Below are positions 13,913 through 34,986 of a stretch of DNA of 64,000 nucleotides, one piece after another. The notes beneath the pieces were generated by a model that was not told the origin of the DNA, did no database searches, and saw nothing but the letters and a program-made list of their open reading frames with translations. Source of the DNA: Octopus sinensis (Eukaryota); contig NC_043001.1 in the NCBI RefSeq assembly GCF_006345805.1, positions 15,004,001-15,068,000 of the forward strand. The letters run 5' to 3'. Position 1 is the stretch's first letter. Every line of letters starts with the position of its first letter. Made by a program: the position numbers and the translations under genes.

Positions 13913-14047
13913 TTACACGTTGGTGCTCCGAGACTGTTGATTAGCAGGAAAATGGATAATAAATTCCTTATTGTTTTGTTTCACAATGAAGTCATGTTGG
14001 CAAATTTCTGACTCTGATAAAATTGGTGAGGAAAATCTGGAGTCAAC
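13913..14047 (-). CDS. IgSF membrane protein, terminal coding exon 9 (VDSRF...QQSRSTNV*)
   Basis: Acceptor gtttactttgtttcag|GTT, phase 0; 44 codons then TAA at 13915-13913; ends in S/T-x-V. Confidence 0.78.
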   Translation of the reverse strand, partial: VDSRFSSPILSESEICQHDFIVKQNNKEFIIHFPANQQSRSTNV

Positions 14048-14099
14048 CTGAAACAAAGTAAACTTAGTTTTTATACATTCGTATATACAAAATACACAT

Positions 14100-14335
14100 A
14101 TTTATTTCTTTATTGGCCACCACAGGGGGCTAAACATAGAGGAGACAAACAAGAACAGACAAAGGGATAAGTTGATTATATCGACCCCAGTGCATAACTG
14201 GTATTTATTTAATCGACCCCAAAAGGATGAAAGGCAAAGTCGACCTCGGTAGAATTTGAACTCAGAACTTAATGGCAGACGAAATACTGCTAAGCATTTC
14301 GCCTGGTGTGCTAACGATTCTGCTAGCTCGCTGTC
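14100..14335 (-). mobile_element. SINE family B, antisense
   Basis: Reverse complement of the family B pattern. Confidence 0.85.
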
Positions 14336-15056
14336 CTACAAAATACATATATTAACATATTATTCTATAAGCATCATAAATAATATTTATGTGTCAGTGG
14401 ATGTTTAATGTGACAGAAAATGTGTGTGTGTGTGTGTGTATATATATATACATACATACATACATACACACATACAAAATGTTAGCGCAAAGCAGTGTTT
14501 AGGCATAAGCAAAATTCAGGTTGGTCAAAGTATGTTTGTGACATACTTCAACTGCTAAAAGGCAAATACTTGGTTTGACTGGGCTGGCATACTGGAAGGT
14601 CGCACCAGACTCCAGTCTGATTTGGTATCGTTTTCTACAGCTCGATGCCCTTCCTAAAGCCAACCACTTTGAGAGTGTAATTGGTGCTGTTGCATGCCAC
14701 TGGCACAGGTGCCATTTGTGTGACACCAGTGTCTGCCACAATTGAGATTTTGCTTGGCTTGATGGGTCTTCTCAAGCATGACAAAAGGCCAAAGGTCTTG
14801 GTCATTGCCTCTGTGAGGCCCAACGCTCAAAAGGAACTCAGCCACTTTGCCTCTGTGAGGCTCAACGCTTGAAAGGTGCTCTTTACACACACATGCTCAT
14901 AAGAGATGCAAGCATAGCTGTGTAGTAGAAAGTTTGGTTCCTAATTAAAGGATTTCGGGTTCAATCCTGCTTCTTGGCACCTTGGGCAAGTGCCAACTAT
15001 AATCCTGAGTTAACCAATGGCTTGTGAGTGAATTTGGTAGACAGAACTGTATGACA

Positions 15057-15292
15057 AGGCGGCGAGCTGGCAGAAACGTTAGCACACCGGGCAAAATGCT
15101 TAGCGGTATTTCGTCTGTTATTACGTTCTGAGTTCAAATTCCACTGAGGTCAACTTTGCCTTTCATCCTTTCGGGGTCGGTAAATTAAGTACCAGTTATG
15201 CACTGGATCGATGTAATCAACTTCATCCCTTTGTCTGTCCTTGTTTGTCCCCTCTATGTTTAGCACCCTGTGGGCAATAAAGAAATAAAAAA
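15057..15292 (+). mobile_element. tRNA-derived SINE, family B
   Basis: aaggcggcgagctggcagaaacgttagc...gagttcaaattcc (B box)...ctttcatcctttcggggtc...gggcaataaagaaata. Confidence 0.88.
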
Positions 15293-15952
15293 CTGTATGA
15301 CAAGTGGTTTTCCTAATTTTCAACCATTTATAGCCATACTGTATTCTCAAAACAAGGAGACACATGTGTACATACACACACCCACACCAGCATAGAAGCC
15401 AGATGTTAAATGATGGTGATGTATATATTGGGCTTCTTACAGTTTCTATGTACCAAATCCATTACCTATGGACCCCTTTGCTTACTATTTTATTCTGGTG
15501 AACCCTATAGCCATTTGATGTTTAAAAACTAATTTGTCCCTTTATGTTTATCCCCTTGTTTGTCCCCTCTATGTTTAGCCCCTTGTGGGCAGTAAAGAAA
15601 TAACTAGTTTTATAGAAACTTCTTACAAAATTCCTATTTTTGTTTTTCACACATTAACTTATGTAGATTGAAATATTAAATATGTACAACACTGGAGAAA
15701 GAAACTAAGCCAAGTCTTGCAATAAATACATCTAAATCAAAATTATTTTCATGGACCCTTAATATACTAGTGTGGGTCCCTAATTTACTATTTTACTTGT
15801 AAGGACCTCCAAAAATCTTATACGGACCCATATGGTCCCTGGTTGAGAACTACTGCTCTACACAGTCACTAGACGTTGCCAGAAACAGCAACCAGATCTT
15901 TATCATCCCACACTCTCTCTTAATAAGGTAAAAACATATGCATTAGATAATA

Positions 15953-16518
15953 TTGGGTTGTCCGGAAAGTTCATGCCGATTTTTGAAGGAAAGAAAAAGG
16001 TCAATAAATACTTGCCATTACATTCTTAGTCAACCAAATATGAACCATTTTGTTGCACAATGCGTCTCCATCTTTCCTTTAACTTGAAAATACCCTCTTC
16101 CCAGAATCGAGGTGGTTTCATGGCAAAGAATTCATCAAGGTATCTTTTTACATCATCCAAGGAATTGAAATTTTTACCATTAAGACTATTCTGCAGAGAC
16201 CTGACTAAGTGGAAATCCGAAGGAGCAATATCTGGTGAATATGGAGGCTGGGGGTAACACATCCCAGCCGAGCTGCCCCAATTTTTGTCTGGTTCCAAAG
16301 CATCAAGTGCCGAAAATGAACTTTCTTATCTTCCATTTTAAAGGGTTACAAAATTAACACAGGTTATAGGAACATAAACCTTCTTCCACGAAACGATAGC
16401 TTAAACTGTGCTCTAAATAGAGGTGTAGTCAAATCTTATTTTATGGACTCAACCATGTTCTAAAATAAGTCGAAAGGTAAGCTACTATAAATCAGCACAA
16501 ACTTTCTGGACAACCCAA
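15953..16518 (-). mobile_element. Internally deleted mariner (DD34D-type) DNA transposon
   Basis: Imperfect ~28-bp TIRs (ttgggttgtccggaaagttcatgccgattt / aaatcagcacaaactttctggacaacccaa), TA on the left. Transposase N-terminus MEDKKVHFRHLMLW (ATG at 16336) is joined to the C-terminal PQPPYSPDIAPSDFHL...WEEGIFKLKERWRRIVQQNGSY. Confidence 0.92.
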
Positions 16519-16654
16519 AATATAGGCTCAGATAGACAATGTTGAGATCAGACTAGATGGCATGGGTATTACTTGAACGTTTTTGATCAAAGTACTGCTA
16601 GTTCATAACAACAACTATAACAACAAATACACAAAACATGTTGTAACACTTTAC

Positions 16655-16703
16655 CTGGTCTTCCTGGCTGTGTGGGCTTGGTTGGTCCTCTCTTATATCT
16701 GTG
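16655..16703 (-). CDS. IgSF membrane protein, 49-nt micro-exon 8 (VTDIREDQPSPHSQEDQ)
   Basis: Acceptor ...caccattgcag|C, donor CAG|gtaaag; phase 2 in, phase 0 out. Confidence 0.72.
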
Positions 16704-17204
16704 CTGCAATGGTGAATGTTGACTTGTCAAAAATTATTCACACATGACCAAAGAGAATAAATAAAAAAATCAGAAATGTTGTATAGAGATATGTGACATG
16801 TTAATTCTTTAAATACAAATCCTTGATTAGTAAATTAAATTGGTTGACTGGTTAAACACCATCACCAGGCTCATGGGGTCACAACCATTTAGACCTGGCC
16901 TCCAACAGGAGGATTATATCCCTTCTTCCTTCACACATGAACTTGAAGGTGCATGGCCTTGAGTTAAATGTATTGCACTCCTGGTCATAAGAGTATATCA
17001 AGGCATGCCCATATCTTCACATTCCATTTTTAGCTGATAATACTGAGGAAGTAGGTTGATTGTGTTATGTAACAGAACTGACTTATGTAATAACAATTGA
17101 CCTGGGGAAACACGTGCATAATATATAAAGCTTAAAAATACTGATTAATATATACGAAGGGGAAACAGATCAGAAGTGAAGTCATATTATATGACTTCAT
17201 ATTA

Positions 17205-17646
17205 TATGGCAAGCTGGCAGAAATGTTAGTGCACCGGGTGAAATGCTTAGTGGTATTTCGTCTGTCTTTATGCTCTGAGTTCAAATTCTGCCGAGGTTGA
17301 CTTTGCCTTTCATCCTTTCTGAGTCGATAAATTAAGTACCAGTTGCATACTGGGATCGATCTAATTGATTGCCCCTGCCTCTCCAGAAATTTCAGGCCTT
17401 GTGCCCAGAGTAGAAAAGAATAAATATAAGGTGGTGAGCTGGCAGAAATGTTAGCATGCTGGGCGAAATGCTTAGTGGTATTTCGTCTGTCTACGTTCTG
17501 AGTTCAAATTTTGCCAAGGTTAACTTTGCCTTACATCCTTTAAGGGCCAATAAATTGAGTACCAGTTGCATACTGGGGTCGATCTAATTGACTGCTCTCA
17601 CCCCTTCCCCAAAATTTCGGGCCTTGTGGCTAGAGTAGAAAAGAAT
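17205..17646 (+). mobile_element. Two tandem SINE family B copies
   Basis: Copies at ~17205-17418 and ~17428-17646, both ending agtagaaaagaata. Confidence 0.85.
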
Positions 17647-17841
17647 ATTAATAACACAACCTATTCTGTTAAGGTTTGAATTTATCACCTATATGTTGTT
17701 AATGCATCATTTCTATCAACAAAAGCGATTAACAAACCACCTCAGGGTCACCAATCTGAATGATGTCCCCCTCATAGTGTGATCCTTCTGTGGAAGACCA
17801 ATATGCAATTTATAGTTCTTAAGAGAAAATAGAAGACTTAC

Positions 17842-17863
17842 ACACTGTCCGTGTCTTTTACAT
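17842..17863 (-). CDS. IgSF membrane protein, 22-nt micro-exon 7 (DVKDTDS)
   Basis: Acceptor attattttgttttccag|, donor |gtaagt; phase 1 in, phase 2 out, which is the shift needed to keep the next exon open. Confidence 0.72.
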
Positions 17864-18303
17864 CTGGAAAACAAAATAATACAAATGTTATGAATCCTGA
17901 TAAAGAACTTGGGGGGAAAAAGGTTTATTTATGATTTTTAATGGTAATGCCCTTCCCATGGCTACAAGTGTATTCTGGAAGCAGCAGCAGAGAATTTGGG
18001 TTGGTGTATAAAACCATAATATCAATATTGCATCATATCAGGGTGGCAAGCTGGCAGAATCATGACCATGCCAGGCAAAATGCTTAGCACCATTTCAGAC
18101 ATCTTTACGTTCTGAGTTTGAATTCTGCTGAGGCCGGCTTTGCTTTTCATCCTTTTGGAGTTAGTAAAATAAGTACCAGTTGAGTACTGGGATCCATGTA
18201 ATTGATTCTACCCCTTCTTCTGAAGTTGCTGGTCTTGTGCCAAATTGTGGAACCAATATTACATCATATCTAAAGGTAATGAGCTGACAGGAAAAAGGCT
18301 TAA

Positions 18304-18524
18304 CCCTTTTGTTACCATATTTCTGTTGAGATGGTCTGTGTTTCTTTCAATTAATTTTAAATATAGCAAAGAATTTAGTAAAATAACTTAGTTATCATTA
18401 AGCTAGTGTTAGGAACATAAATTGTGGCTAAGGTTTGGTGAAAGATTTTAATTCAGAATTTTTGAAAAAGGACATTTGTACTACAGAACCAGAGGCAGTT
18501 TCAGCCAGGTTGGTATCGAAAGGG
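18304..18524. mobile_element. piggyBac-type MITE, copy 1
   Basis: TTAA|cccttttgttacca ... ttggtatcgaaaggg|CTAA (right TSD has one mismatch). Confidence 0.78.
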
Positions 18525-18544
18525 CTAAATTAATCATTTCTTAA

Positions 18545-18758
18545 CCCTTTTGTTACCATAGTTCTGTTGAGATTCTCTGGGTTTCTTTCAATTAATTCTA
18601 AATATAACAAAGAATTTAGTAAAATAAGTTAGTCACAATTTATGTTCCTAACATTAGCTTAATGATAACTAAGGTTTGGTGGGAGATTTTAATTCAGAAA
18701 ACAAGACATTTGTACTAGAAAGCCAGAAGCGGTTTCAGCTGGGTTGGTATTAAAAGGG
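18545..18758. mobile_element. piggyBac-type MITE, copy 2
   Basis: TTAA|cccttttgttacca ... ttggtattaaaaggg|TTAA; colinear with copy 1. Confidence 0.82.
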
Positions 18759-19027
18759 TTAATGACTTTTCGTCCATCTTTATGTTCTGAGTTCAAAACT
18801 CTGTTTGTCGTTCATCCTTTTGGGGTCAATAATACAAGAACCAGTTGATCACAGGGGTGAATGTAATCAACTCCCCCTTAACTAAAAATTGTTGACCTTC
18901 TACCAAAATGTGAAGCCATTATGACATTATCACTCAACTCTTTTGTGAAGCCCAACATTTTGAGATCAAACCTCATCACTTCTCTCAAAAACTTCTGTGG
19001 TTTATTTTTTATTAAAATGACATTTAT

Positions 19028-19199
19028 AGGCGTAGGAGTGGCTGTGTGGTAAGTAGCTTGCTTACCAACGAAATGGTTCTGGGTTGAAACCCACTACGTG
19101 GCACCTTGGGAAAGTGTCTTTTACAATTGCCTCGGGCCAACCAAAGCCTTGTGAGTGGATTTGGTAGACGGAAACTGAAAGAAGCCCATCATATATATA

Positions 19200-19230
<31 letters not shown>

Positions 19231-19448
19231 GTACGTGTGTGTATATGTTTGTGTGTCTGTGTTTGTCCCCCCAACATCGCTTGACAACCGATGCTGGTGT
19301 GTTTGCATCCCCGTAACTTAGTGGTTCAGCAAAGGAGTCCGATAGAATAAGTACTAGGCTTACTAAGAATAAGTCATGGGGTCGATTTGCTTGACTAAAG
19401 GTGGTGCATGGCTGTATTCAAATGACTGAAACAAGTAAAAGAGTAAAG
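19028..19448 (+). mobile_element. tRNA-derived SINE, family A (internal microsatellite), full length
   Basis: A box tggctgtgtgg, B-box-like ggttgaaaccc, body ...gggcaagtgtctt...gaaactgaaagaagccc-(TA/TG)n-gtttgtcccc...aaatgactgaaacaagtaaaagag. Confidence 0.85.
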
Positions 19449-19456
19449 AGAGTTAC

Positions 19457-19612
19457 CTTTCCATAGCCAAGGACAGATTCTCTGGAAATATTCCAAAACC
19501 ACTTGTTTATACTGAACACCATAATATATTCCAGTTGTCAGAAGAACTATAATGGCTATAAAACCAATAACAGACCCAACAAAAATTGCAGCATAAGAAA
19601 CGGTGTTGGCAT
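19457..19612 (-). CDS. IgSF membrane protein, exon 6: transmembrane helix and juxtamembrane region
   Basis: Acceptor ...ttgttctcttcag|AT, donor AAAG|gtaact; 156 nt, phase 1-1; hydrophobic YAAIFVGSVIGFIAIIVLLTTGIYYGV followed by QYKQ. Confidence 0.85.
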
Positions 19613-19689
19613 CTGAAGAGAACAATGCGAAAGAGAAAAGGATTTTAGCGAACAGAAAGTAGAGATTATACAGTATGGTCAGTCATAGT

Positions 19690-19899
19690 CAGGGGTGTAA
19701 CTAGGGTGGGGGCAAGCAGGGCACATACCCTGGGTGCCACTTTGAGCGGGGTGCAGTTTTGGCAAAGATCATTTTCTAATTAAGCCATTTCTATGCGAAT
19801 TTCCACTTTTTGGTTGATGTTGTTGTTGGTGGTTGTGGGGGTGGAGGGTTGCAATTTTGATGCTTGCTCTGGGTGCTGTTTACCCTATCTACACCCCTG
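19690..19899. mobile_element. hAT-type MITE with 8-bp TSD
   Basis: TIRs caggggtgtaactagggt / accctatctacacccctg; perfect TSD gtcatagt at 19682-19689 and 19900-19907. Confidence 0.85.
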
Positions 19900-20108
19900 G
19901 TCATAGTGGTCAGTTGTTTATAGTGGTCATTCAGTTGTCACTCATAACAGTCTGTCAGCTTTAGCTCAGCCTGCCAAGCCTATAGGTCAATTCAGTACTG
20001 ACCATACAATTCCTTATACCTTACCATTTTACCATCATACCATTACATATTATATCTTTGTAATATCTATTTATATTAAACTCATTATCTCCTTTAACAT
20101 GCACTTAC

Positions 20109-20144
20109 TTTCAGCTGGATATGTTGTATTCTTGATTCCAAGAC
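20109..20144 (-). CDS. IgSF membrane protein, 36-nt micro-exon 5 (GLGIKNTTYPAE)
   Basis: Acceptor atttctgtatttcag|, donor |gtaagtg; phase 1-1; contains the N-T-T sequon. Confidence 0.75.
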
Positions 20145-20615
20145 CTGAAATACAGAAATCAAAAGAATTAGTGCAATCACCATCATCATCACTTTATATT
20201 TCCACCATTTTAATTATTAAGGTCATTGCAATCCCTTCGTTTTAACCATTAATGTCAACACCATCACCTCCCCACCCCCACTGTAATTACAACCTGACTA
20301 TCTTAACTATTTCTGCAACAGCTACCATCACTACCATTATACCTTCATCACTGTCACCACAACCACCACCACTGTCCCAGTTATCACTGCCATCTTTCTA
20401 ATGTAGACCATTAATGTCAGCACTACCCACATCGGCCCATCTCCACCACCACCACTGTCACCACCAGCACCACTGCCACCCACATCGTTGCTACCATGAC
20501 TATCAACTTAAACCAGTATTCCCATCATCAATAATCCTGTCATCATCATCATCTCCTTATAGTAGTTATCATTGTTACTATTGTATACGAAGCTAGTTCA
20601 TTGATACCAGTATAC

Positions 20616-20690
20616 CCTCTGCAACATCACACCTCTGTGAATGCTTTGCTTGACCTGCATAAACAGCAGTCAAGTCTTCTTCAAATGATA
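20616..20690 (-). CDS. IgSF membrane protein, tentative stalk exon 4 (VSFEEDLTAVYAGQAKHSQRCDVAE)
   Basis: Pyrimidine-rich acceptor ...tccttttatctaatactgcaag|TA; 75 nt, phase 1-1, open. The donor G|gtatac is weak and the gene stays in frame without this exon. Confidence 0.4.
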
Positions 20691-21194
20691 CTTGCAGTAT
20701 TAGATAAAAGGAAGGACACAATGTGGCCCTAGATTTCCTGTGTTTCAATAAAATATATTTGCTTAAAGGTCCGTTCAATTTTGCATTAACAATATTGTCA
20801 GTAAATGAGAAGAGTTTCACAGCTCTGCTCAGGATTTGAACTTACAACTCCTCAGTTGTGACTGCAATAACTCATCCACTGGGAACAAATTTAGCAATTT
20901 TTGGCAAAATACATACGCTTTTGCCAAGTTGTAACAAAAAGTTAGTGAAATATTTAAAATATTTACAGTTGGATAGACAAATGTAACAGAATAATTTGAC
21001 AAAAAATGTGAATTTTTAATATTTAAAAAAATATTAAAAAAAAAAAAAATTTTTTTAATGTTATGGTGACTCTACAATGGGGCAGACTGATGCAATGGTC
21101 AAGATGTGCCATTTTAGTGACTGCCTTCATGTAATTTGAGAAGGCACCTGTTAGACCTGATTGTCCATTAAACAAAGTATACATTTTTTAAATA

Positions 21195-21545
21195 ATAATA
21201 ATAATAATGAAATTATTGTATACAGTGCTCAGGTGCACCACAACTTGTCAAAAGTGCATATAAAGCATATGCAGTAATGTACAAATGTCTGGAAAGTGAA
21301 CAGTGTATGAGTCAGATACATACTTGCGCGTGTATGGAGGGGAGAAAATCAGGTGTAGTGTTAGCGAATCTGAGGAAGCATGGAAGTTTTGAAGGATGCA
21401 GTGCTCCGACAACTAACATTGATGCCGGCAGTTTGTTCCATGCTTCAGCAACTCTCAGCGTGAAAAAATGTTTCCTAAAGTCATGGGAGCTGTGCTGTTT
21501 TCTGACTTTGTAAACATGTCCACAGGTGTTAGACAGGTGGAGTTT
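21195..21545 (-). mobile_element. CR1-clade LINE 3' fragment
   Basis: Minus strand SNTCGHVYKVRKQHSSHDFRKHFFTLRVAEAWNKLPAS...SFK matches the CR1 ORF2 end (TRGH...RxxFFSxRVxxxWNxLP); (TTA)n tail. Confidence 0.85.
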
Positions 21546-21592
21546 TTTTACCCTTCACTGCCAATTTTACATTGGTACTAATTATAAAATAT

Positions 21593-21745
21593 ATGAAGAG
21601 GTGCAAAAAAGTTCCTGGCTTTAAGGATATCACGAAAGACCTGGCTAGAGACCCAAACTTCCGAGTTCTTTTACAGGGTTTAGAAAAACTGAAGAAATGT
21701 TGCAATAAGTATGTGAAACTGAGAGAGGAATATGTTGAATAAAAT
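21593..21745 (+). mobile_element. Short mariner remnant
   Basis: TIR-like start tatgaagaggtgcaaaaaagttcctggct, followed by LQGLEKLKKCCNKYVKLREEYVE*, which resembles a mariner transposase C-terminus. Confidence 0.6.
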
Positions 21746-23284: not shown

Positions 23285-23757
23285 TCGATGACTGGCACCT
23301 GTGCTAGCGGGGTGCAAAGAGCACCATACGAGTGTTATCATTGACAGAGCAACTAACTGGCTTCCGTACCAGTGGCACATAAAAGGTACCATTCAAGTGT
23401 GATCATTACCAGCGTTGCCTTACTAGCACTTGTGCCTGTGCTAGTAGGGTGCCAGAGCACCATCCGAGCATGATCGTTGCCAGAGTGACTTTCTGGCACC
23501 TGTGCCAGTGGCATGTGTAAAAAGATTCGAGCGAGGTTGTTGCCAGTACCGCCTGACTGGCCCCCATGCTGGTGGCACGTAAAAAGTACCCACTACACTC
23601 TCAGAGTGGTTGGTGTTAGGAAGGGCATCCAGCTGTAGAAACTCTGCCAGATCAAGATTGGAGCCTGGTGCAGCCATCTGGCTTGCCAGTCCTCAGTCAA
23701 AATCGTCCAACCCATGCTAGCATGGAAAGTGGACATTAAACGATGATGATGATGATG
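23285..23757 (+). mobile_element. SINE-like family D with (GAT)n tail
   Basis: Internal gtgccagtggca repeats, core gtggttggcattaggaagggcatccagctgtagaaa, tail cccatgctagcatggaaag..gacattaaacgatgatgat. Other copies at ~14555-14885, 21870-22075, 25729-26010, 33425-33740, 37053-37315, 39470-39706, 40745-41075, 47255-47400, 49800-49988, 52965-53238 and 55350-55510. Confidence 0.8.
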
Positions 23758-23888
23758 AATTAAATGCTAGAACTGTGTGACTAATTATACAATTTTGTTT
23801 GTTCTTTAAAAGATGACAATATAAAGAGCCCCAGATCATTTTGTAACTGAAACTTCAGCTGACTTGAACAAGTTTTTCCACTACTTAC

Positions 23889-24233
23889 CTAACACTTCTA
23901 TTCTTTGAGCCAAGTTGATTTCTTTGTCTGCCATCGGACTAACAATCTCACAGCGGAACATCAAACCAAGGTCCCAGGCATTTGTCTTGTATACGATGAC
24001 ACTTGATCCCGACACCTGGCAGTTGTCCGTCTCCTCTGCAATGCTATCAATCTGTTTACCAAAATATTCTTGGAACACGTCGATGGTTTGGCGGTAGAAT
24101 GACCATCGGAATCGACCATTTGGTTTCCCCAGTTTACCAGAACATGTCAGAGAAATTTCTGTATTTTGCCAAACGCTCCATTCTGAGTGAAATGCATCAG
24201 AATAAATATTCAAAGATTCTATGAACGGTTTGG
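23889..24233 (-). CDS. IgSF membrane protein, exon 3: C2/CD80-like Ig domain
   Basis: Acceptor ...tgattatttcag|CC, donor TTAG|gtaagt; 345 nt, phase 1-1; motifs LTCSGKLGKPNGRFRW and SSVIVY...DLGLMFRC. Confidence 0.88.
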
Positions 24234-24771: not shown

Positions 24772-25128
24772 CTTTCAAAATAGTATTTTCTGTCTGTGAC
24801 TGAAAAGTTCCATAAGACGTCTGCATAGAACAGGAATAAACTCTCTGGTCAGAACATAGAGCTGGTGCCATTAGTAACTCAACAACTGTATTGTCATCAC
24901 TCGGACGGGATATTTCCGCATGATGTTGAAGCTGTTGGTCAATCCATGTGGTTTGGTTCTTCTCAATGTTCACCAAAAGAGTCCGTTCACCATTTTTAGC
25001 ATTGGCAGCAAAGAATAAGATGCTGTAAATGTTGATGTTGTCTGGGAAAGAATTGACCAAACCTTGGCAGCGAACCTTCAATGTGTCTTCACCAATAACG
25101 GGTTTCTCGGGCAGAACAGAAAGTTCCA
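24772..25128 (-). CDS. IgSF membrane protein, exon 2: V-like Ig domain
   Basis: Acceptor ...tcttagttacag|TG, donor AAAG|gtaaga; 357 nt, phase 1-1; B-strand LKVRC and F-strand DQRVYSC; no stop codons. Canonical C-strand Trp is absent. Confidence 0.85.
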
Positions 25129-26683
25129 CTGTAACTAAGACAAAAAGAATTGCAACATTTATTTCTTGTGCAACAATATTGTTTTAAAAAGGATTGAGGG
25201 TTAGAAAATATTGGTGAAAGAAATGCTATGAGAAGTTCTGTAATTATTTCTCCAGACCAATTCTCTGTTAGTGTTATTTAATTCTAAGTTCATCCATGAC
25301 ATTAAATTTCCTTACAGGAATGGTTATGGTCAAAAAGGTTGCTTCCCAACTTGATAGTTTGGGGTTCAGTCCCACACTAGGGCAAGTGTTTTCTGCTATT
25401 GCTTTGAGACAACCAAAGCCCTTTGAGTGGTTTTGCTAGATGGAAACTGAAAGAAGCCCATTGTATATGTGTGCTGATATGTTCCACTTTCTGATGATGT
25501 AACTTCATTGTCTGCATGACTGGTTCGAACAGTGGACCTTGCTGACTGACCCTTCTTACTGAGTCTGTCCAATATTTATCAGAAATAGATCAGCCCACTT
25601 CTCTCCTGAGGGCGTCTGCCAAAACATGCACACATGTGGTGGAGTGAATGTATTTTTGTGTCTCCTTGTCTTAACATTGTGTGATGGTTGTAAGCAAGTG
25701 TCACCATCATACAAGCAGTGTCATTTCTAATCATCATCATTAATATCCACTTTTCATGCTGGCATGGGTTGGACGGTTCGACCGGGGTCTGGGAAGCCGG
25801 GAGGCTGAACCAGGCTCCAGTCTGATCTGGCAGTGTTTCTACAGCTGGATGCCCTTCCTAATGCCAACCACTACGAGAGTATAGTGGGTGCTTTTATGTG
25901 CCACCGGCACGAGGGTCAGTCAGGCAGAACTGGCAACGGCCACGCTAAAATGGTGCTTTTACATGCTACCTACACAGGAGCCAGTCCAGCGGCAGTGGCA
26001 ACGCCCTCGCTCGTATGTTGTTTTTCACTAACAACCAGCATCTACAAAAACATGTCTGGCCATTGGGAAATATTACCTCCCTTGAAAACAAGTGTTTGCA
26101 ACAGGAAGGGCATCCACCCATAGAACATTTGCCTCAATAAACTCTGTCTGTCCCATGCAAGCCTGGAAAAGTGAATGTTAAGATATGATACATTCATTTC
26201 TTAGTCTTCAGCTTTATCCTAGCAATAAATAACTTTGTTTCATATTCACTTAGTGTCACATGTTATGTCTTGTCACAAAACCTGTCACGTTTCCTTTTGT
26301 GTTTGTATGTGAGTATGGATGGATGGATTTAACGCATGCGTTCTGTTTTTTCTTTTCTCATTTGTCCTGGTATTGCATTTAGTTGTAAATGAGGATCCCT
26401 TCATTTCCAATGTCTTATGAAAACGGAAAGGGCCTCCAGTTACAGAAAATCTACCTCGGTTAATCCCATCTGATCCCTGCAAGCATGGAAAAGTAAACGC
26501 TAAAATAATCACACAAACACACACACACACACATATCAATTATCCTTTAACGTCCCCTTTTCCATGCTGGCATGGGTTGGATGATTCAACAAAAACAGTC
26601 AAGCCAGAGTGGGTAAAATCAGATGCTCATACGTTAGGTGAGGGTAGATATATTATCTTCATTTATAAGATGTTATATATTTC

Positions 26684-26920
26684 TTTACTACTCACAAAGG
26701 GCTAAACACAGAGAGGACAAACAAGGACAGACAAACGGATTAAGTCAATTATAGTCAATTACATCGACCCCAGTGCATAACTGGTACTTATTTAATCGAC
26801 CCTGAAAGGATGAAAGGCAAAGTCAACCTCGGTGGAATTTGAACTCAGAACGTAGTTGCAGATGAAATACCGCTAAGCATTTCGCCCGGCGTGCTAAAGT
26901 TCCTGCCAGCTCACCGCCTT
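26684..26920 (-). mobile_element. SINE family B, antisense
   Basis: Full-length reverse-complement match to the other family B copies. Confidence 0.85.
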
Positions 26921-26943
26921 TCATTTATAAGAGGTTCTAACCC

Positions 26944-27306
26944 CATAACAGCTGATTAATGTTACCAAACAATTTCACGGAGGTCACTGGCTACAAAACA
27001 AACAAAAAAAAAAAGCACCAATACAAGGGACCTAACTGTGGTAGACCTAAGGATCAATTGTGTTCTGTTTGTGCTGTTAATCTGTTTCTTTTGGCTGTGT
27101 TCGTTCATCCGTGAAATTCATTCTGATTCTTTTACAATTCTGAGAACCATAATAAACCAGATGTGATATTTTCAGGATCCCAGCAGCAAAGAGTCCAAGC
27201 CATACTTTTCCATTCAGCCATATCTAATGATTGCCAAGTTTATCTTCCCAATTCTGGAAGGTTATCAGCCAAAAAACCCATTTGGTAACATTAATTGGCT
27301 GTTAGG
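26944..27306. mobile_element. Probable MITE with 26-bp imperfect TIRs
   Basis: cataacagctgattaatgttaccaaa versus the reverse complement of tttggtaacattaattggctgttagg: 23/26 matches. Confidence 0.55.
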
Positions 27307-27315
27307 AGACTATAA

Positions 27316-27719
27316 TCTTTATATATAAAAGAGAGGTTGTGTGAGTGTCTGTCTCCTACGATTTAGATTCCTAACTACTCCCACAGTTTGCGGTGCAGTT
27401 TAACCAAATTCGGGTATCTTATAGTCGTGATTCATATCGAGCCCTTCTGGGTATTAGAGCGCGTCTACGATGAGTCTATGATTTAAAAAAAAATTTACCA
27501 TCATTTTTTTCCATTTTAATGCATTTTTTCGTTATTAAATAAGGGAAGTAACTCTCTAAAAATGTCTACGATGAGTCAACGATTTAAAAAAAAATTTACC
27601 ATCAGTTTTTTTTTCCATTTTTAATGCATTTTTTTGCTATTTTTTGGCTATAACTCTCTAAAAATGCTTATATAGTTATTTCCCTTACAAACCCGAGCAA
27701 CGCCGGGCGATACTGCTAG
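27316..27719 (+). mobile_element. Non-autonomous Helitron
   Basis: A|TC 5' end, CTAG|T 3' end, subterminal hairpin cccgagcaacgccggg (27692-27707), no TSD. Confidence 0.9.
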
Positions 27720-28002
27720 TATGATATAAAGAATAATAGTAATAATAATAATAATATAGATAAAGAGAGGGAGAGGGGGTGTGCGGGTATGACTGTGTGG
27801 TAGAGAAACTTGCTTGCCAACCATGTCGTCCTGGTTTCATTCCCACTGTGTGGTACCATGGGAAAATGTCTTCTACTGAAGCTATAGGTCACAACCAACC
27901 AGTGAATTTGGTAGACAGAAACAGAAATAAGCCTGTTGTGTGTGTGTGTGTGTTGAGGGTGTAGGTGTGTCCTATTTTCAGTCAATATATCTTTCCATTT
28001 TA

Positions 28003-28232
28003 GGGCAGTGAGCTGGGAGAACCGTTAGCATACCAGGCAAAATGCTTAGTGGTATTTCATTTGCCGTTACGTTCTGAGTTCAAATTCTGCTGATGTCGAC
28101 TTTGTCTTTCATCCTTTTGGGGTTGATTAAATAAGTACCAGTTACGCACTGTGTTCGATATAATCGACTTAATCCCTTTGTCCGTGTTTGTCCCCTCTAT
28201 GTTTAGCCCTTTGTGGGCAATAAAGAAGTAAA
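28003..28232 (+). mobile_element. SINE family B
   Basis: Full-length match to the other family B copies. Confidence 0.85.
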
Positions 28233-28404
28233 TATATCTTTCCATTTTTAAGATGGTATTGTGTGATTTGAGGGAAATTTTTATCTACTATTTCTAGCAG
28301 GTCAAGCAAACACGCCCATCCTCCTAGATTGACTCTTCATTTCTTTCTTTTATTGGTAATAAAATCCTCATTGAGGAATGAAGTTAGTGGATTTGTGTTT
28401 TTTT

Positions 28405-28470
28405 AATAATAATAATAATAATGAAATTATTGTATAGTGCTCAGGTGCACCACAACTGCTCAGGTGCACC
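28405..28470 (-). mobile_element. CR1 extreme 3' tail fragment
   Basis: aataataataatgaaattattgtatagtgctcaggtgcaccacaac, with a local duplication of ctcaggtgcaccaca. Confidence 0.6.
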
Positions 28471-28820
28471 ACAGTGGTTTGGAATACTGTCTCATGTGGA
28501 TCAGTCTACCCCGACAGGTGGGGGTGAGGAAGGTTTTAGAGATGATTTGATGTGGGGTGGAGGAAATCAACATTTGATCTGAAAATTATGAATGTCTGCA
28601 CTTGGTGTGAAGACGTGAGAAGTGATGGAATTCCAGAAGATATCCCCCTCATCGTCATTTAATATCTTGGATTAGATGGCTCAATACTTTTCATATTAGC
28701 AGTGGCATTCATCCAGAGTGGGTTGAGCCAGCTCTGACCAATGAGTTCACCATGTCCCCCATGAATGCAGACCACATCTGACATTCACCCCCTAATGTTC
28801 CAGCAGGCAATGTAATACTT

Positions 28821-28984
28821 CTGCCAGGTCTTGTTGTTTCATTCCACTAATATTGCTCAGCCATTCAACAGATATCTCTCTTCAATACTTTATGATCAAA
28901 GCAGCAACAGAACAGGATTAACTTGGCTTAAATAACAAATTAATCCACCCAAGATTTCTTCATTAATAAATTTTTTTTCAAAAT
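28821..28984 (+). repeat. Unclassified ~160-bp repeat, copy 1
   Basis: Reverse complement of 33259-33420. Confidence 0.75.
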
Positions 28985-30429
28985 AACAAAAATAAAAAAA
29001 TAAAAACCACTAATTAACTTACTGAAAGGGAAAGAAATAAATAACCAATATTAGTGAATCGCTAATACTATTTTAATTATAAGAACAGTCAGGAATGGCA
29101 TGATTGGAAAATATTGCTTTGTGAGATTTCTGTACATTCATCATCATCATCATTTTGTATCAGCTCTCCATGTTGGCATGGGTCTGATAGGTTTATAGAA
29201 TCCAGTGGATCAGGGGACTATTTCTGGCTCCAGTCTTCTACTTTTAGAATTATTATTCCAACCCCTGGATGTTTATCTTATCACCAAAAATCCAGTTTGT
29301 AGATTTGACAAATGCTTCACCGGAAGAGCAAGCACCTTGGATAGTGCTGATGCTGTAGCCATAGTCATTGTTCATTGCTGAGGTGTAGGGGTCATGTTTG
29401 GAGTTCATGTTCCGATGGTTCCAGAGGACCCAGCTTAGCCCAAGTGCTGGTCTCCATTGTCTGCTTTTTATAAAGTCTCTATGGTTTGATGCCCTTCCAA
29501 ATGCCAACCCCTTTACAGAATGTCCAAGGTGTTTCTTTCATGGTACCAACATTAGTGGGGACACCAGGTACCTTGCAAGACAAGACTTCTTGACTGAGTG
29601 GAGGTTCTGTATTAAGGGTGGTGGTTTTATGCCAAGTGTAGAGAAGTTAAAGCATGATAGAGGGGACAGGGACACATGTTGCTCTAGAGGAAGTACATGG
29701 GTACTCCAACAGGAAAAGGGAGAAAGGATGGTGAAGATGAGATGTCAGGGCTAACCCTAAAGCTACAAGAAAGAGGATAGAGAGATAATAGGGGTAGAAA
29801 ATTGAAAAGGGCTGGCTGGATGGATTGGTAGGGTTGTGAAAATGTGAAAAGAAAGTTAGTGAAAGGAGAACAGAAATGAAGATCATTCTGAAATTAAAAA
29901 TGAGAGAGAGAGAGAGGGGGGGGCTTATGTGTAGTGGTGGTGGTGGGGGATAACTGGGTAATAAGGTGCAAAGTTAAGTAGATGATGTGGAGGGGGAGAT
30001 AGAGGGTGGGGGTGGAGTAGGGCTGGTGGTACATTATTCAGTTTAACTAAAACACCACTTTTTACTCAACATACCATAAATGATGTAGAAACTAGTAGAA
30101 CCCATCTAAATTTTGGGTGGAGCTTTTTTAAAACTGAAGGTCCACCCCATCAATCTCTCAGTTATGTGTCAACTGATGATGAAAGTAATAGATTGGTGTG
30201 GGTGGGCGTATGAAATATTTTGCTTCAACAAGTCTTATCTCAATCATACTTCAAACCTGTCATGTGGTGTCAGTTAATACCTTTCACTTTCGTTATCTTT
30301 TAAAACACAAGACATCTGATACGGTGTCGGATTATTGAAGACATAGCTTTGCTTATATATATATTCGTTGAAATACAATATCTATATAAAATAAACTCCA
30401 ATCACTACATACATATCCACATACATTCA

Positions 30430-30858
30430 TATACATACATGCACATACACAGGAGTGGCTGTGTGGTAAGTAGCTTGCTAACCAACCACATGGTTCCGGC
30501 TTCAGTCCCACTGCGTGGCATCTTGGGCAAGTGTCTTCTGCTATAGCCTCGGGCCAACCAATGCCTTGTGAGTGGATTTGGTAGACGGAAACTGAAAGAA
30601 GCCTGTCGTATATATGTATATATATATATATGTATGTGTGTGTGTATATGTTTGTGTGTCTGTGTTTGTCCCTCTAGCATTGCTTGACAACCGATGCTGG
30701 TGTGTTTACGTCCCCGTCACTTAGCGGTTCGGCAAAAGAGACCAATAGAATAAGTACTGGGCTTACAGAGAATAAGTCCTGGGGTCGATTTGCTCGACTA
30801 GAGGCGGTGCTCCAGCATGGCCGCAGTCAAATGACTGAAACAAGTAAAAGAATAAAAG
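30430..30858 (+). mobile_element. SINE family A, full length
   Basis: Same head, body and tail as 19028-19448; retains many CpGs. Confidence 0.88.
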
Positions 30859-30886
30859 AATACATGCGCATACGCAGACATAATAT

Positions 30887-30921
<35 letters not shown>

Positions 30922-30922
<1 letters not shown>

Positions 30923-31100
30923 ATTTCAACAATATTAAGGAATGGCCCTGATAGGCCATTCGACTCACCAGAAAGAGCAGCCAAAAAATGTTTTAATTTT
31001 CCTTTGATTTCTGAATTACTACTATTTAGCAGTTTTGTTTGGCTGCTCTTTCTGGTGATCGAATGGCCTATCAGGGCCATTCCTTAATATTGTTGAAATT
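30922..31100. mobile_element. MITE with ~60-bp TIRs inside a (TA)n tract
   Basis: aatttcaacaatattaaggaatggccctgataggccattcga...ccagaaagagcagccaaa is mirrored at 31040-31100. Confidence 0.8.
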
Positions 31101-31192
31101 ATATATATATAGTCTGTGACTATTTTCTCTTTCTCACTAGACCGCTGGTGGCGAAATAAATTTCTATCGAATTTTTTGCTACCCTTATATTG

Positions 31193-31223
<31 letters not shown>

Positions 31224-31417
31224 TTCTTTACTACCCACAAGGGGCTAAACACAGAGGGGACAAACAAGGACAGACAAAGGGATTCAGTCGATTACATCGG
31301 CCCCAGTGGGTAACTGGTACTTAATTTATCGACCCCGAAAGGATGAAAGGTAAAATATATATATATACCGTCCAACCCATGCTAGCATGGAAAGCGGACG
31401 TTAAACGATGATGATGA

Positions 31418-31456
<39 letters not shown>

Positions 31457-32123
31457 ACACCACCACCGTCATCACTACCAACATATAGTCGCTTTCCCAT
31501 GTTGACCCATCTGACCCATGCTGGCATGGAAAAACATGCGTAGAATGATGGCAGTGTGTGTGTGTTCATACACAATACAGACAAAAATGCATGTATGTAT
31601 ACACATGTATATACATACATACAAATATGCTTAGAATATATATGTCTATCTGTGCTATGCCTGCATATGTGTATATATATGTATGTGTGTATGGATGCAT
31701 ATATATTAGACTTATGATTGTAAGATTGTGGTTTCAATTCCTAGAGCGGGTGATGCATTATTTTCTATAACAAAACACTTTATTTCACAAAGCTCTAATA
31801 AAAGTGGGTAATCTTGCTTTGAACTGGAACCCTGTCCAGGGAAGAATATATATTCTGGAGAAAACAGGAAACTGGCCCCATGTTCTTTGTAGAGTCATAA
31901 GGACTAACCGTGTGTGTATGTATGTATATATATATATATGCGCAGGCTTGGTTGTGTGGTAAGAAGCTTGCTTCCCAACAACATGGGTCTAGGTTCAGTC
32001 CCCCTATGTGGCACCTTAGGCAAGTGTTTTCTACGATAGCCTCAGATCAACCAAAGTCTTGTGGAATTGATAGACAGAAACTGAAAGAAGCCTATATATA
32101 CATATATAAATATTATATATATA

Positions 32124-32166
<43 letters not shown>

Positions 32167-32695
32167 CAGGGTTATTCAAAAAGAGTGAACCAATTTCATT
32201 ATGCAATATTTTATTAAGGAAAAGCAATAGGAATCTCCAGCTAAGTCACAAGTATTTACTCACAATCAACTTTCATTTCTATCTTACAAATGTTCAATGT
32301 GGCCACCACTTGCAGCACGGACAACATCAATGCAATATGAGAATTCCTCCCAGACACGAATCAGTATATCACAATCCACTGAGTACTTCTTCGGCTGTCT
32401 GGTTGAATGCTTTATCGGAGCTTCTCCATTTCCCTTCTATGTCAATATCTTCTGGAATCATCTCAAGCAAAGCAAATTTATTCTTTAATCCCATAATGAA
32501 CTTGCTTTTGCTCTGCTGATACTCATCTGGGAGGAATTCTCTTATCACATTGATGTTGCAGGTAGTGACCACTTGTAAGACAGGAAATAAAGTTGATTGT
32601 GAGTAAATACTTGTGACTTAGCTGGAGATTCCTATTGCTTTCCCTTATTAAAATACTGCATAATGAAATCGGTTCAGTCTTTTTGAATAACCCTA
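32167..32695. mobile_element. Fold-back Tc1/mariner derivative: two inverted copies of a transposon 3' end around an RTE-like filler
   Basis: Inverted arms of ~170-190 bp starting cagggttattcaaaaaga; flanked by (TA)n. The arms encode RVWEEFSYCIDVVRAASGGHIEHL* and WEEFSYHIDVAGSDHL*. Confidence 0.85.
32372..32522 (-). mobile_element. RTE-type LINE ORF2 linker fragment inside the fold-back element
   Basis: FIMGLKNKFALLEMIPEDIDIEGKWRSSDKAFNQTAEEVLSG fits the post-endonuclease pattern F-x-L-x-L-x-N-R-F-x-x-L...W...TAEEVLG of RTE elements. Confidence 0.6.
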
Positions 32696-33258
32696 TATAT
32701 ATATATATATATCATCATGCTGCCATCGTTCAGGCAGTTTGACAGGAGCTTGCAAGCCAGAGAGCTGCACCCAAATTTAGATGTGTTGTACCAGTTTCTG
32801 CATCATCCATTTCCAAGTAAGTTTTATCTCAATAATTCTGATGCAACACTAATTCTATCACTATCTCTATTTCTCTCTCTCTTCCTCTTTCTGTATTTGT
32901 ATCTCCCTTTTTTCTCTCATCCTTTCTCTAATTTTTCTCCTCCCTCCTTCACCGTTCTATACCTGTCCCTCTCTCATCCTCCTTGACTTTCGTTGCTCAC
33001 ATGTGACCAGTGGCCATCTTTCTTTTCCTAACTCAAATTTCTTTATTTCTTCTCGTTCAGCTACCGGGATAGCAGGCATTTTTGTCTGTCTCCTGTCAAA
33101 GCTTCTTTCTCCAGCATTCACCACTTCACCTCATTATGGCTTAACAGCCCATACCGTTTGTTTTCACTATCCTGTTTTTGTTACCAACTTTGACCTTCTG
33201 CAAATCCCAAATTTTATTTAATTTGCTTTGCAGGAGCAACTCTTTGACGAAGATACAT

Positions 33259-33420
33259 TTAAAAAAAAATGTTATTAATGAAGAAATCTTGGGTGGATTA
33301 ATTTGTCAATTTAAGCCAAGTTAATCCTGTTCTGTTGCTGCTTTGGTCATAAAGTATTGAAGAGAGATATCTGTTGAATGGCTGAGCAGTATTAGTGGAA
33401 TGAAATAGCAAGACATGGCA
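33259..33420 (-). repeat. Unclassified ~160-bp repeat, copy 2 (inverted)
   Basis: Reverse complement of 28821-28984; cut off by a SINE at ~33420. Confidence 0.75.
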
Positions 33421-33896
33421 GGGGATAGGTGGGGGTCCCTGTGCCAGTGGCACGTAAAAAGCACCATCCGAACGTGGCTGATGCCAGCACCGCCTTGGCT
33501 GGCTCCATGCCGGTAGCACATAAAAGACACCAACTGATCATGGCTGTTGCCAGCCTCCTCTGGCCCCTGTGCTGGTGGCACGTAAAGAGCACCCACTACA
33601 CTCATGGAGTGGTTGGCATTAGGAAGGGCATCCAGCTGTAGAAACACTGCCAGATCAGACTGGGCTTGGTGCAGACTCCTGGCTTCCCAGACCCGTCCAA
33701 ACCATGCTAGCATGGAAAATGGACGTTTAAATGTTGAAGTGAAAGTAATGATGTTCGTGTGTTCTTGAATGGCCTAAAAACATCTTCCATGCTGAAATTG
33801 TATAAATATGTGTGTGTGCGTGTATATCTATGTATGTATGTATGTATATGTGTATGTATATACATGTGTGTATGTGTGTGTATATATATATGTTAT

Positions 33897-34450
33897 GTCA
33901 GGTCACTTTCGAGTGCTACTGGTAACATGTAACCCAGTACAACCTGTTGCATGGTTGGGTCGTCCGCGACTAAACCGGCAACCCCACCAAACTAGCTTGG
34001 TGAGGAGGGTGATTATTGGACACCCTGCGGGATGAAAAACAAAACCCGTCAAAGAGCGGAGGAGCTCTTGAGAGTCAACGGCCATCCAATAAAGGTCTTA
34101 AGGCTGTATCATGCGTGGGGACATAGAAATAATCGGACTGAATACCCGATCGCGCGGTTAAACCATTGGGAGTGAAGGACCCCTAGCCTTTGCTAGGGCA
34201 TCCTTCTAGGAGAAGGTAACTCAGGTAACTGGGATAACTCCGACATAAAACCTGCGTCTCTGTAGTTACTGATGATGTTGACTTGTTCTTCTTTTCGGAT
34301 TATGGCTGCTGTTGCTTCGTGAGTGGGATTGACTCTGTGCACAGCCTTTCCTCACTTAAAAAAAAATCTTCTTGCACAGGCATTGCACGATAACAACATT
34401 GATTAAGCTTCGTGCAATGGCCATACTCGATCACGAGGGGGAAGCCACCA
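33897..34450 (+). mobile_element. GC-richer interspersed element resembling an RTE-type 5' UTR
   Basis: CpG-retaining block in an AT-rich background, with motif gggcatccttctaggagaaggtaactc resembling the ...ctaggagaaggaaaactc motif I recall from RTE 5' UTRs; no ORF. Confidence 0.4.
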
Positions 34451-34910
34451 TGTATGTATGTATGTGTATGTATATATATATATATATATATATTATGTAT
34501 ATATATATTATGTATATATATATTATATATGTATTTATGTGTGTGTGTGTAGTCTATATTGAGAGAGTGTGGTACATGTGAATGAAAATCCAAGTAAAAC
34601 TGTATCTCAATTGGTTTTGTTTAACAAACTCTTGTAATAATTCTATCGCAGCATTTCTAATCAATGCCAAGACAGTGGAAGCTCTATTCCCCCCCCCCGA
34701 CACCACTAATTAGGAGCAGGTGGCTTACGAAGAAGAAATTACTAAAAGCAACCTTAATCAAATACAAGAACAGACAATTAAAAGAGTTTATATATACACC
34801 ACACCTTTTATGAGGGTGTGGTTGGAGGCCATTGATAATCTAAATTGGTCAGGAGTGAAAGAAACGAGAAGATGATGGAAAGATAATAGCAGAGATAGGA
34901 AAGTGCTTAC

Positions 34911-34986
34911 CTTGTTTGTGACGCTGGGAGGTTATTAGGAGAGGAGCATAGAGGAGAACAATGAGATATTGTGTAAGGCCAGTCAT
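34911..34986 (-). CDS. IgSF membrane protein, coding exon 1 (signal peptide, MTGLTQYLIVLLYAPLLITSQRHKQ)
   Basis: ATG at 34986 with A at -3; hydrophobic core YLIVLLYAPLLITS; ends in a phase-1 donor G|GTAAGC that joins in frame to the phase-1 acceptor at 25128. The link across a ~9.8 kb intron is inferred. Confidence 0.65.

What the first reader, a model, noticed from the sequence alone, without database searches (positions are those of the whole stretch)
13913..34986. Nine-exon V+C2 immunoglobulin-superfamily receptor with a PDZ-binding tail, mostly invisible to the ORF track
Seen: nine exons with GT-AG borders whose phases chain without a break (1-1-1-1-1-1-2-0) into a ~416-aa ORF (391 aa without exon 4). 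The layout is signal peptide, V-like Ig, C2-like Ig, stalk, TM and a ~90-aa tail ending STNV*. Known: V+C2 type I proteins with C-terminal S/T-x-V motifs include the JAM/CTX, nectin-like and B7-like adhesion or recognition receptors. Inference: this is probably a lineage-specific mollusc or cephalopod IgSF surface receptor; I cannot name an orthologue.
Basis: partly seen in the sequence, partly recalled or inferred. Interest (0 to 1): 0.75.

Follow-up and report, generated by a model that had tools for sequence, protein, structure and literature searches.

The report
Octopus two-Ig membrane protein gene

Summary
The minus-strand gene is real, and its ends are exactly as given: ATG at 34986, stop at 13913. 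All have GT-AG borders, the phases run 1-1-1-1-1-2-0, and the frame is open for 393 aa ending S-T-N-V. With exon 3 left out, the chain is letter-for-letter RefSeq XP_036359010.1 (Octopus sinensis, "uncharacterized protein LOC118763481"). The Octopus vulgaris model CAI9722951.1 includes exon 3, with 1 change in 115 aa.

Exon 3 passes Pfam's ig threshold. Exon 2 is V-like but below threshold. The ESM Atlas model of the O. vulgaris protein resembles two-domain Ig ectodomains such as nectins, tapasin-related protein and MUC18. There is one transmembrane helix, two conserved N-glycosylation sequons and an 88-aa acidic tail with a class I PDZ-type end.

The gene has no paralogue in its own genome. 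An exhaustive search found only the two octopus proteins and one unlabelled 150-aa relative. This is an ordinary new member of a known kind.

The parts
34911..34986 (-). Exon 1: start codon at 34986 and a 25-aa signal-peptide-like N-terminus; the donor is AAG|GTAAGC, phase 1
   Evidence: Identical to residues 1-25 of P0001. It is the first ATG of its open frame, with A at -3.
24772..25134 (-). Exon 2: V-like Ig domain, 363 nt, phase 1 to 1. A tandem acceptor offers a second in-phase AG 6 nt downstream, which would start the exon at 25128.
   Evidence: Pfam V-set E=0.0095 (16.6 bits, below the cut-off of 26). 100% identical to P0001 residues 27-146. Weak alignment to VHH framework strands. Unique in its own genome.
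23889..24233 (-). Exon 3: second Ig domain, 345 nt, phase 1 to 1, a frame-preserving cassette. It is skipped in the O. sinensis RefSeq model and included in the O. vulgaris model.
   Evidence: Pfam ig PF00047 E=6.6e-5, 23.6 bits, above the cut-off of 21.8. 1 difference in 115 aa from P0002. Strong splice sites. Unique in its own genome.
20109..20144 (-). Exon 4: 36-nt stalk exon carrying an N-T-T sequon, phase 1 to 1
   Evidence: Best-scoring candidate of the blind splice scan. Matches P0001 and P0002.
19457..19612 (-). Exon 5: transmembrane helix plus juxtamembrane segment, 156 nt, phase 1 to 1
   Evidence: It is the only hydrophobic run above 1.6 in the Kyte-Doolittle 19-residue window, maximum 2.7.
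17842..17863 (-). Exon 6: 22-nt cytoplasmic micro-exon, phase 1 to 2
   Evidence: Present in both P0001 and P0002.
16655..16703 (-). Exon 7: 49-nt cytoplasmic exon, phase 2 to 0. Present in the O. sinensis model only.
13913..14047 (-). Exon 8: last coding exon, 44 aa ending S-T-N-V followed by TAA
   Evidence: Unique in its own genome. AATAAA lies 378 nt downstream, at 13535-13530.
1585..1656 (-). Possible alternative last coding exon. It is used by the O. vulgaris model straight after exon 6, encodes 23 aa plus a stop, and has no PDZ-type end.
   Evidence: The C-terminal peptide of P0002 maps here behind an AG acceptor. The 23 aa and the stop are intact and identical in this window. No evidence on whether it is used in O. 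sinensis.

Best explanation
This is the Octopus sinensis gene LOC118763481. It has eight coding exons spread over 21 kb on the minus strand. It encodes a single-pass type I membrane glycoprotein of the immunoglobulin superfamily. The parts, in order, are a cleavable signal peptide, a membrane-distal V-like Ig domain, a second Ig domain on a frame-preserving cassette exon, a 12-aa N-glycosylated stalk, one TM helix, and an 88-aa acidic, Ser/Gln-rich cytoplasmic tail ending S-T-N-V. The gene structure, the Ig nature of the domains and the topology signals are shown. The rest is inferred: the protein sits on the cell surface, the V-like domain is the binding face for homophilic or heterophilic recognition, skipping exon 3 gives a shorter V-only form, and the C-terminal T-x-V tethers the long-tail form to a PDZ scaffold, as in small junctional or synaptic Ig adhesion molecules.
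For: The exon chain is open with GT-AG borders, and minus exon 3 it equals XP_036359010.1 exactly. The O. vulgaris orthologue includes exon 3 and differs at 11 of the 333 aa upstream of the point where the two 3' ends diverge: 3 in the signal peptide, 5 in exon 2, 1 in exon 3, 0 in the stalk, 1 in the TM exon and 1 in exon 6. Pfam ig scores above its cut-off on exon 3, and V-set matches almost full length but below cut-off on exon 2. Canonical Cys...Y-x-C pairs occur in both domains, and Cys-x12-Trp plus D-x-G-x-x-x-C in domain 2 (read). Exon 2 aligns with the antibody V-domain C'-C''-D-E-F strands. The ESM Atlas model of P0002 has pLDDT 0.69, and its neighbours over residues 26-262 are tapasin-related protein, nectin-1/4 and MUC18 at TM 0.64-0.73. 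There is one TM segment, two N-x-S/T sequons kept in both species, a tail net charge of -5 and a T-N-V carboxyl end.
Against: The RefSeq model lacks the second Ig domain, and the O. vulgaris model lacks the STNV tail, so no public model has the complete 393-aa form. AlphaFold2 gave only low-confidence models (pLDDT 33). The PDZ-type end is a 3-residue pattern with a chance probability of a few percent, and its conservation could not be checked. Function is inferred from architecture alone.
Confidence: 0.7

Rival explanations
1. The main product is the V-only form (signal peptide, one V-like domain, stalk, TM, tail), as in the RefSeq model. Exon 3 would be a rarely used cassette. The protein would then resemble single-V type I proteins such as myelin P0-like proteins or sodium-channel beta subunits, rather than V+C2 adhesion molecules.
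For: XP_036359010.1 skips exon 3. The only distant relative, P0006, appears to run from its V domain straight into a short N-T-K stalk-like stretch with no second Ig domain. The guessed-RNA runs hold at most 0.20 of the sampled words of exon 2 + intron + exon 3, which is less than one exon's share (not interpretable without laying reads).
Against: Exon 3 is intact with strong splice sites and is the best-conserved exon between the two species, at 1 of 115 aa. The O. vulgaris annotation includes it. P0006 sits on a 1257-nt contig and may be truncated.
Confidence: 0.3
2. It is a fast-evolving immune-type or self/non-self recognition receptor with inhibitory signalling, rather than a structural adhesion molecule.
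For: The V domain is very divergent: no relative above 31% identity outside the O. vulgaris/sinensis pair among 1.84 billion representatives. Substitutions between the two species concentrate in the signal peptide and the V domain. A V-Q-Y-K-Q-V stretch fits the ITIM pattern.
Against: The ITIM-like stretch directly abuts the TM helix and is the only one. The gene is single-copy, with no paralogue, unlike typical expanded immune receptor families. There are no expression data.
Confidence: 0.15
3. It is a young orphan or decaying locus with no real protein function, and the models are products of annotation pipelines.
For: Both database entries are predictions. Their 3' ends disagree. No relatives were found in other annotated molluscs.
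Against: Eight exons stay open with canonical splice sites in two species. Ig hallmark residues and both glycosylation sequons are kept. A 31%-identical relative that is a reciprocal best hit exists in another data set.
Confidence: 0.07

Closest known systems
Octopus vulgaris CAI9722951.1 (UniProt A0AA36AWP0, 'Ig-like domain-containing protein')
   Same: It is the orthologue. It is 97% identical over exon 2 and has the same exons 1-6, including the second Ig exon.
   Different: After exon 6 it ends in a different 23-aa exon, which maps to window 1656-1585. It lacks exons 7-8 and the S-T-N-V end.
Nectin / nectin-like (CADM) adhesion molecules
   Same: Type I topology with a membrane-distal V domain followed by further Ig domains. 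Nectin-1 and nectin-4 clusters are among the structural neighbours of the Atlas model, at TM by query 0.69-0.72. They also carry a short tail with a PDZ-type carboxyl end (own knowledge).
   Different: Nectins and CADMs have three Ig domains, and from memory their tails end in class II motifs (E/A-x-Y-V, E-Y-F-I). Here there are two Ig domains and a class I T-x-V end. There is no sequence-level match: C2-set_2 gives only E=0.03 over 30 residues, and phmmer finds no nectin.
JAM / CAR (CTX-type) two-Ig junctional proteins
   Same: An ectodomain of V plus one further Ig domain, a single TM, and a tail with a PDZ ligand. From memory, CAR ends in a class I S-I-V.
   Different: No detectable sequence similarity. 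From memory, CTX-family genes split the V domain over two exons and have an extra disulphide in the second domain. Here the V domain is one exon, and domain 2 has one extra Cys rather than a pair.
Tapasin-related / B7-like V + C ectodomains
   Same: The best structural neighbours of the Atlas model are tapasin-related protein clusters, TM by query 0.72-0.73, which share the V-then-C arrangement.
   Different: These are vertebrate families with C1-set second domains. There is no sequence match, and Pfam C1-set does not hit.

Membership tests
Immunoglobulin superfamily (Pfam clan Ig) | At least one domain matching an Ig-family profile above its curated threshold | tested here: met
   Exon 3 scores 23.6 bits on PF00047 ig against a cut-off of 21.8, E=6.6e-5. 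In P0002 the score is 23.1 bits.
Immunoglobulin superfamily (Pfam clan Ig) | B-strand and F-strand cysteines, a C-strand Trp and a D-x-G-x-Y-x-C-like motif | tested here: met
   Domain 2 has Cys, Trp 13 residues later, and D-L-G-L-M-F-R-C, with a Cys-Cys spacing of 64. Domain 1 has Cys48 and Cys127 with Y-S-C but no Trp at the canonical place (read).
V-set Ig domain (PF07686) | Profile match above threshold, with C' and C'' strands | tested here: inconclusive
   The match scores 16.6-20.4 bits against a cut-off of 26 but spans profile positions 13-105 of 109. Weak alignments (best E=0.022) to the VHH C'-C''-D-E-F region.
CD80-like C2-set (PF08205), as in nectins and B7 | Profile match over the whole second domain | tested here: not met
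   E=0.03-0.13, covering only profile positions 12-41 of 89. The Cys-Cys spacing of 64 is long for a C2 domain. The set of domain 2 stays unresolved.
Nectin / nectin-like | Three Ig domains (V-C2-C2) and sequence kinship | tested here: not met
   Only two Ig exons are present. There are no nectin hits by phmmer or profile search. The resemblance is structural only.
JAM / CAR (CTX family) | Sequence kinship; V domain split over two exons and an extra disulphide in domain 2 (the last two are from memory) | tested here: not met
   No sequence hits. The V domain is a single exon. Domain 2 has a single extra Cys.
Class I PDZ ligand | Free carboxyl end of the form [S/T]-x-hydrophobic | tested here: met
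   The protein ends T-N-V followed by a stop. This is a pattern match only.
Class I PDZ ligand | Binding to a PDZ domain; conservation of the end in orthologues | not testable with these tools
   The O. vulgaris model uses another 3' exon.
Type I membrane protein | N-terminal signal peptide plus one TM helix, with the ectodomain N-terminal to it | tested here: met
   There is a 12-residue hydrophobic core in exon 1 (read). There is a single hydrophobic run, residues about 160-187 of P0001, maximum 2.7. No dedicated signal-peptide predictor was available.

The most novel reading that the evidence does not exclude
This would be an Octopus-restricted, single-copy, rapidly diverging IgSF recognition molecule. 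Its output would be switched in two ways: a cassette Ig exon giving V-only or V+Ig forms, and two alternative 3' ends giving a PDZ-anchored S-T-N-V tail or a short hydrophobic tail encoded beyond a 9.5-kb satellite. That would make a small combinatorial set of surface forms used in cephalopod-specific cell recognition, neural or immune.
Probability: 0.15. Interest if true: 0.4.

Novelty: new member of a known kind. Interest (0 to 1): 0.2.

Why it matters
The direct value is a modest annotation gain. Neither public model carries the full 393-aa form: the O. sinensis model lacks the second Ig domain and the O. vulgaris model lacks the S-T-N-V tail. Two candidate isoform switches, the exon 3 cassette and the alternative last exon, are pinned to coordinates. 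Biologically it adds one divergent, apparently octopus-restricted two-Ig surface protein to a lineage whose cell-recognition repertoire is of interest for nervous-system evolution. Nothing here departs from how small IgSF adhesion or recognition proteins are already known to be built.

Tried and rejected
- **RNA reads:** No junction evidence could be obtained.
- **Orthologous locus:** The O. vulgaris locus could not be fetched, so there is no dN/dS and no check that the STNV exon is conserved.
- **Word search with exon 3:** it found no candidate, probably because of its length window.
- **AlphaFold2:** two runs, P0002 alone and with the 3-row alignment A1, gave pLDDT 33 and pTM 0.19. They are uninformative, so no fold search was run on them.
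- **PDB sequence searches:** they gave only marginal hits. Antibody V domains appear for exon 2 (best E=0.022). A chance match to the helical SCAF8 CID domain appears for exon 3, E=0.018; I rejected it as chance.
- **Other phmmer hits:** P0003-P0005 are bacterial or metagenomic multi-repeat proteins and were rejected as irrelevant.
- **Literature and earlier notes:** the paper search for LOC118763481 found nothing, a general search on cephalopod IgSF found nothing gene-specific, and earlier scan notes held nothing.
rejected as unsupported.
- **Joined product:** the joined 393-aa product has no reference, so it was not sent to any search or fold tool. It was assembled only inside a local script, to count phases and to test string equality with P0001. 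Full-length searches used the database proteins P0001 and P0002.
Full report
**Observation**

The finding lies on the minus strand. Reading the sequence gave a start codon at 34986 with a hydrophobic N-terminus. It also gave two long open stretches bounded by AG and GT in phase 1, at 25134-24772 and 24233-23889. There is a transmembrane exon at 19612-19457 and a last exon ending S-T-N-V followed by TAA at 13913. A blind splice-site scan picked out the 36-nt stalk exon (20144-20109) and the TM exon as its best phase-1/1 candidates.

**Independent confirmation**

An exhaustive phmmer search with the exon 2 translation, given by reference, covered 1.84 billion cluster representatives and returned two near-identical proteins.
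- P0001 is 278 aa and 100% identical. It is RefSeq XP_036359010.1, "uncharacterized protein LOC118763481 [Octopus sinensis]".
- P0002 is 356 aa and 97% identical. It is CAI9722951.1 from Octopus vulgaris, which UniProt names "Ig-like domain-containing protein".

The window is therefore Octopus sinensis: contig 5 of a 2.72-Gb assembly, around 15.0 Mb.

Mapping the peptides of these proteins back onto the window fixed the remaining small exons at 17863-17842 and 16703-16655. The eight exons are 76, 363, 345, 36, 156, 22, 49 and 135 nt long. All seven introns are GT-AG, the phases are 1-1-1-1-1-2-0, and the frame is open for 393 codons. Leaving out exon 3 reproduces P0001 letter for letter.

The only excess is an optional 25-aa "exon 4". 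Neither model has it. Between exon 3 and the stalk exon, seven open AG..GT phase-1/1 stretches of 72-78 nt occur in 3.4 kb. One falls inside a copy of an interspersed repeat at 23499-23723 and a second lies about 60 nt from it. Such a candidate is therefore expected by chance. The AGs at 25135 and 25129 are both in phase, and both database models use the upstream one.

**A note on method**

The joined 393-aa product has no reference and was not sent to any search or fold tool. It was assembled only in a local script, for phase counting and a string comparison. Whole-protein analyses used the database proteins P0001 and P0002.

**What the protein is**

- **Second domain (exon 3).** It passes Pfam's ig threshold (23.6 bits against 21.8, E=6.6e-5). 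It carries the classical Cys, Trp 13 residues later, and a D-x-G-x-x-x-C motif. Its match to the CD80-like C2-set profile is partial and weak (E=0.03), and its Cys-Cys spacing of 64 is long for a C2 domain. I therefore call it an Ig domain of unresolved set, not a proven C2.
- **First domain (exon 2).** It matches V-set over nearly the whole profile but below threshold (16.6 bits alone, 20.4 in P0002, cut-off 26). It has the B and F cysteines with Y-x-C. It aligns weakly (best E=0.022) with the C'-C''-D-E-F part of camelid VH domains. This fits a divergent V domain.
- **Fold.** The ESM Atlas holds P0002 with its own model (pLDDT 0.69, pTM 0.55). Over residues 26-262, its structural neighbours are tapasin-related proteins, nectin-1, nectin-4 and MUC18, at TM by query 0.64-0.73. 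The ten feature-based hits shown are mostly Ig families. My two AlphaFold2 runs failed for lack of alignment depth (pLDDT 33). They say nothing either way.
- **Topology signals.** There is one strongly hydrophobic segment. Two N-x-S/T sequons are kept in both species. The tail is 88 aa with net charge -5 and is rich in Ser, Gln and Asp/Glu. It has three CK2-type sites and one ITIM-pattern stretch that abuts the membrane. The carboxyl end is T-N-V, which fits the class I PDZ-ligand pattern.

**Distribution**

- Neither Ig exon nor the tail exon has a second copy in the 2.7-Gb genome at E up to 0.01-1.
- Word-based searches with P0002, and with a profile of the three relatives, found nothing beyond the same proteins.
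- The only other relative is P0006. It is an unnamed 150-aa protein from a 1257-nt Logan contig, 31% identical over the V domain, and it shares the extra Cys eight residues before the F-strand Cys. Its only match in the O. sinensis genome is exon 2 itself, so the two are reciprocal best hits.
- Between O. sinensis and O. vulgaris there are 11 differences in 333 comparable residues. They fall mainly in the signal peptide (3 of 25) and the V exon (5 of 121). The second Ig exon has 1 of 115.

The gene is thus single-copy, divergent and, as far as annotated proteomes show, confined to the O. vulgaris/sinensis lineage plus one unidentified organism.

**Isoforms**

Exon 3 is 345 nt and phase 1/1, so skipping it keeps the frame. 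The RefSeq model skips it and the O. vulgaris model keeps it. P0006 also seems to pass from its V domain straight into a short stalk-like stretch (weak).

The O. vulgaris model goes from the 22-nt exon 6 to a different last exon. In this window that exon lies at 1656-1585, beyond a 9.5-kb 22-bp satellite. It has an AG acceptor, and the same 23 residues and stop are intact. Each candidate end has an AATAAA within 400 nt downstream (weak). Which forms are actually made could not be tested.

**Mechanism and confidence**

- The gene structure, the Ig character of both domains and the type I topology signals are shown.
- By analogy with small IgSF adhesion or recognition proteins, I infer surface location, ligand or homophilic binding through the V-like domain, and PDZ-scaffold tethering through T-x-V.
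- I put about 0.9 on [quoted passage not shown].
- I put about 0.35 on the specific PDZ-anchored adhesion reading.
- The main rivals are a predominantly V-only product (0.3 as the main isoform), an immune-type receptor (0.15), and a functionless orphan locus (0.07).

**Comparison with known families**

In architecture it works like the two- or three-Ig junctional and synaptic adhesion proteins (JAM/CAR, nectin/CADM). It fails their membership tests. It has no sequence kinship and two rather than three Ig domains. Its V domain sits on one exon, and its PDZ pattern is class I where, from memory, nectins and CADMs have class II. It is best filed simply as a divergent IgSF member.

**Novelty and verdict**

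The gene is already in RefSeq and ENA as an uncharacterised prediction, and the family is among the most common in animals. The gains are a fuller isoform picture and the fact that it is single-copy and lineage-restricted. The verdict is a new member of a known kind, with low interest (0.2).

Noticed in passing
window 3382-12915: A 9.5-kb satellite with a 22-bp unit, about 420 copies at 82-85% match. It contains short blocks in the opposite orientation at 11450-11859 and 12728-12915. It starts about 1 kb downstream of the gene's stop codon and lies between the STNV exon and the alternative last exon. It explains the high G+C and strong skew at 4-10 kb.
   Followed up: partly
window 1585-1656 (-): An intact 23-aa exon with an AG acceptor and a stop. 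It is identical to the C-terminus of the O. vulgaris model and lies 12 kb beyond the STNV exon. It may be an alternative last exon or an annotation artefact.
   Followed up: partly
window 33321-33713 and 21 further matching pieces, about 15 loci (e.g. 14602-14714, 23499-23723, 25756-26028, 37107-37317, 52963-53210): An interspersed repeat of about 390 bp, on both strands, at 70-84% identity. It produces many of the spurious ORFs in the introns, recognisable by a recurring 'LQLDALPNANH'-type peptide. Pfam finds nothing in its ORF.
   Followed up: partly
window 16026-16298 (-), intron 7: A 90-aa ORF that from memory looks like the C-terminal part of a mariner-type transposase. Pfam gave no hit at E up to 0.1, so this remains a recollection only.
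   Followed up: partly
window 25129-25136 (-): A tandem acceptor at exon 2, with two AGs 6 nt apart, both in phase. Using the downstream one would remove two residues (V-T) after the signal peptide.
   Followed up: no
P0006 (Logan contig, 1257 nt): An unlabelled 150-aa protein that is the only distant relative of the V domain and a reciprocal best hit to exon 2. Its source organism is unknown.
   Followed up: partly
   Followed up: no
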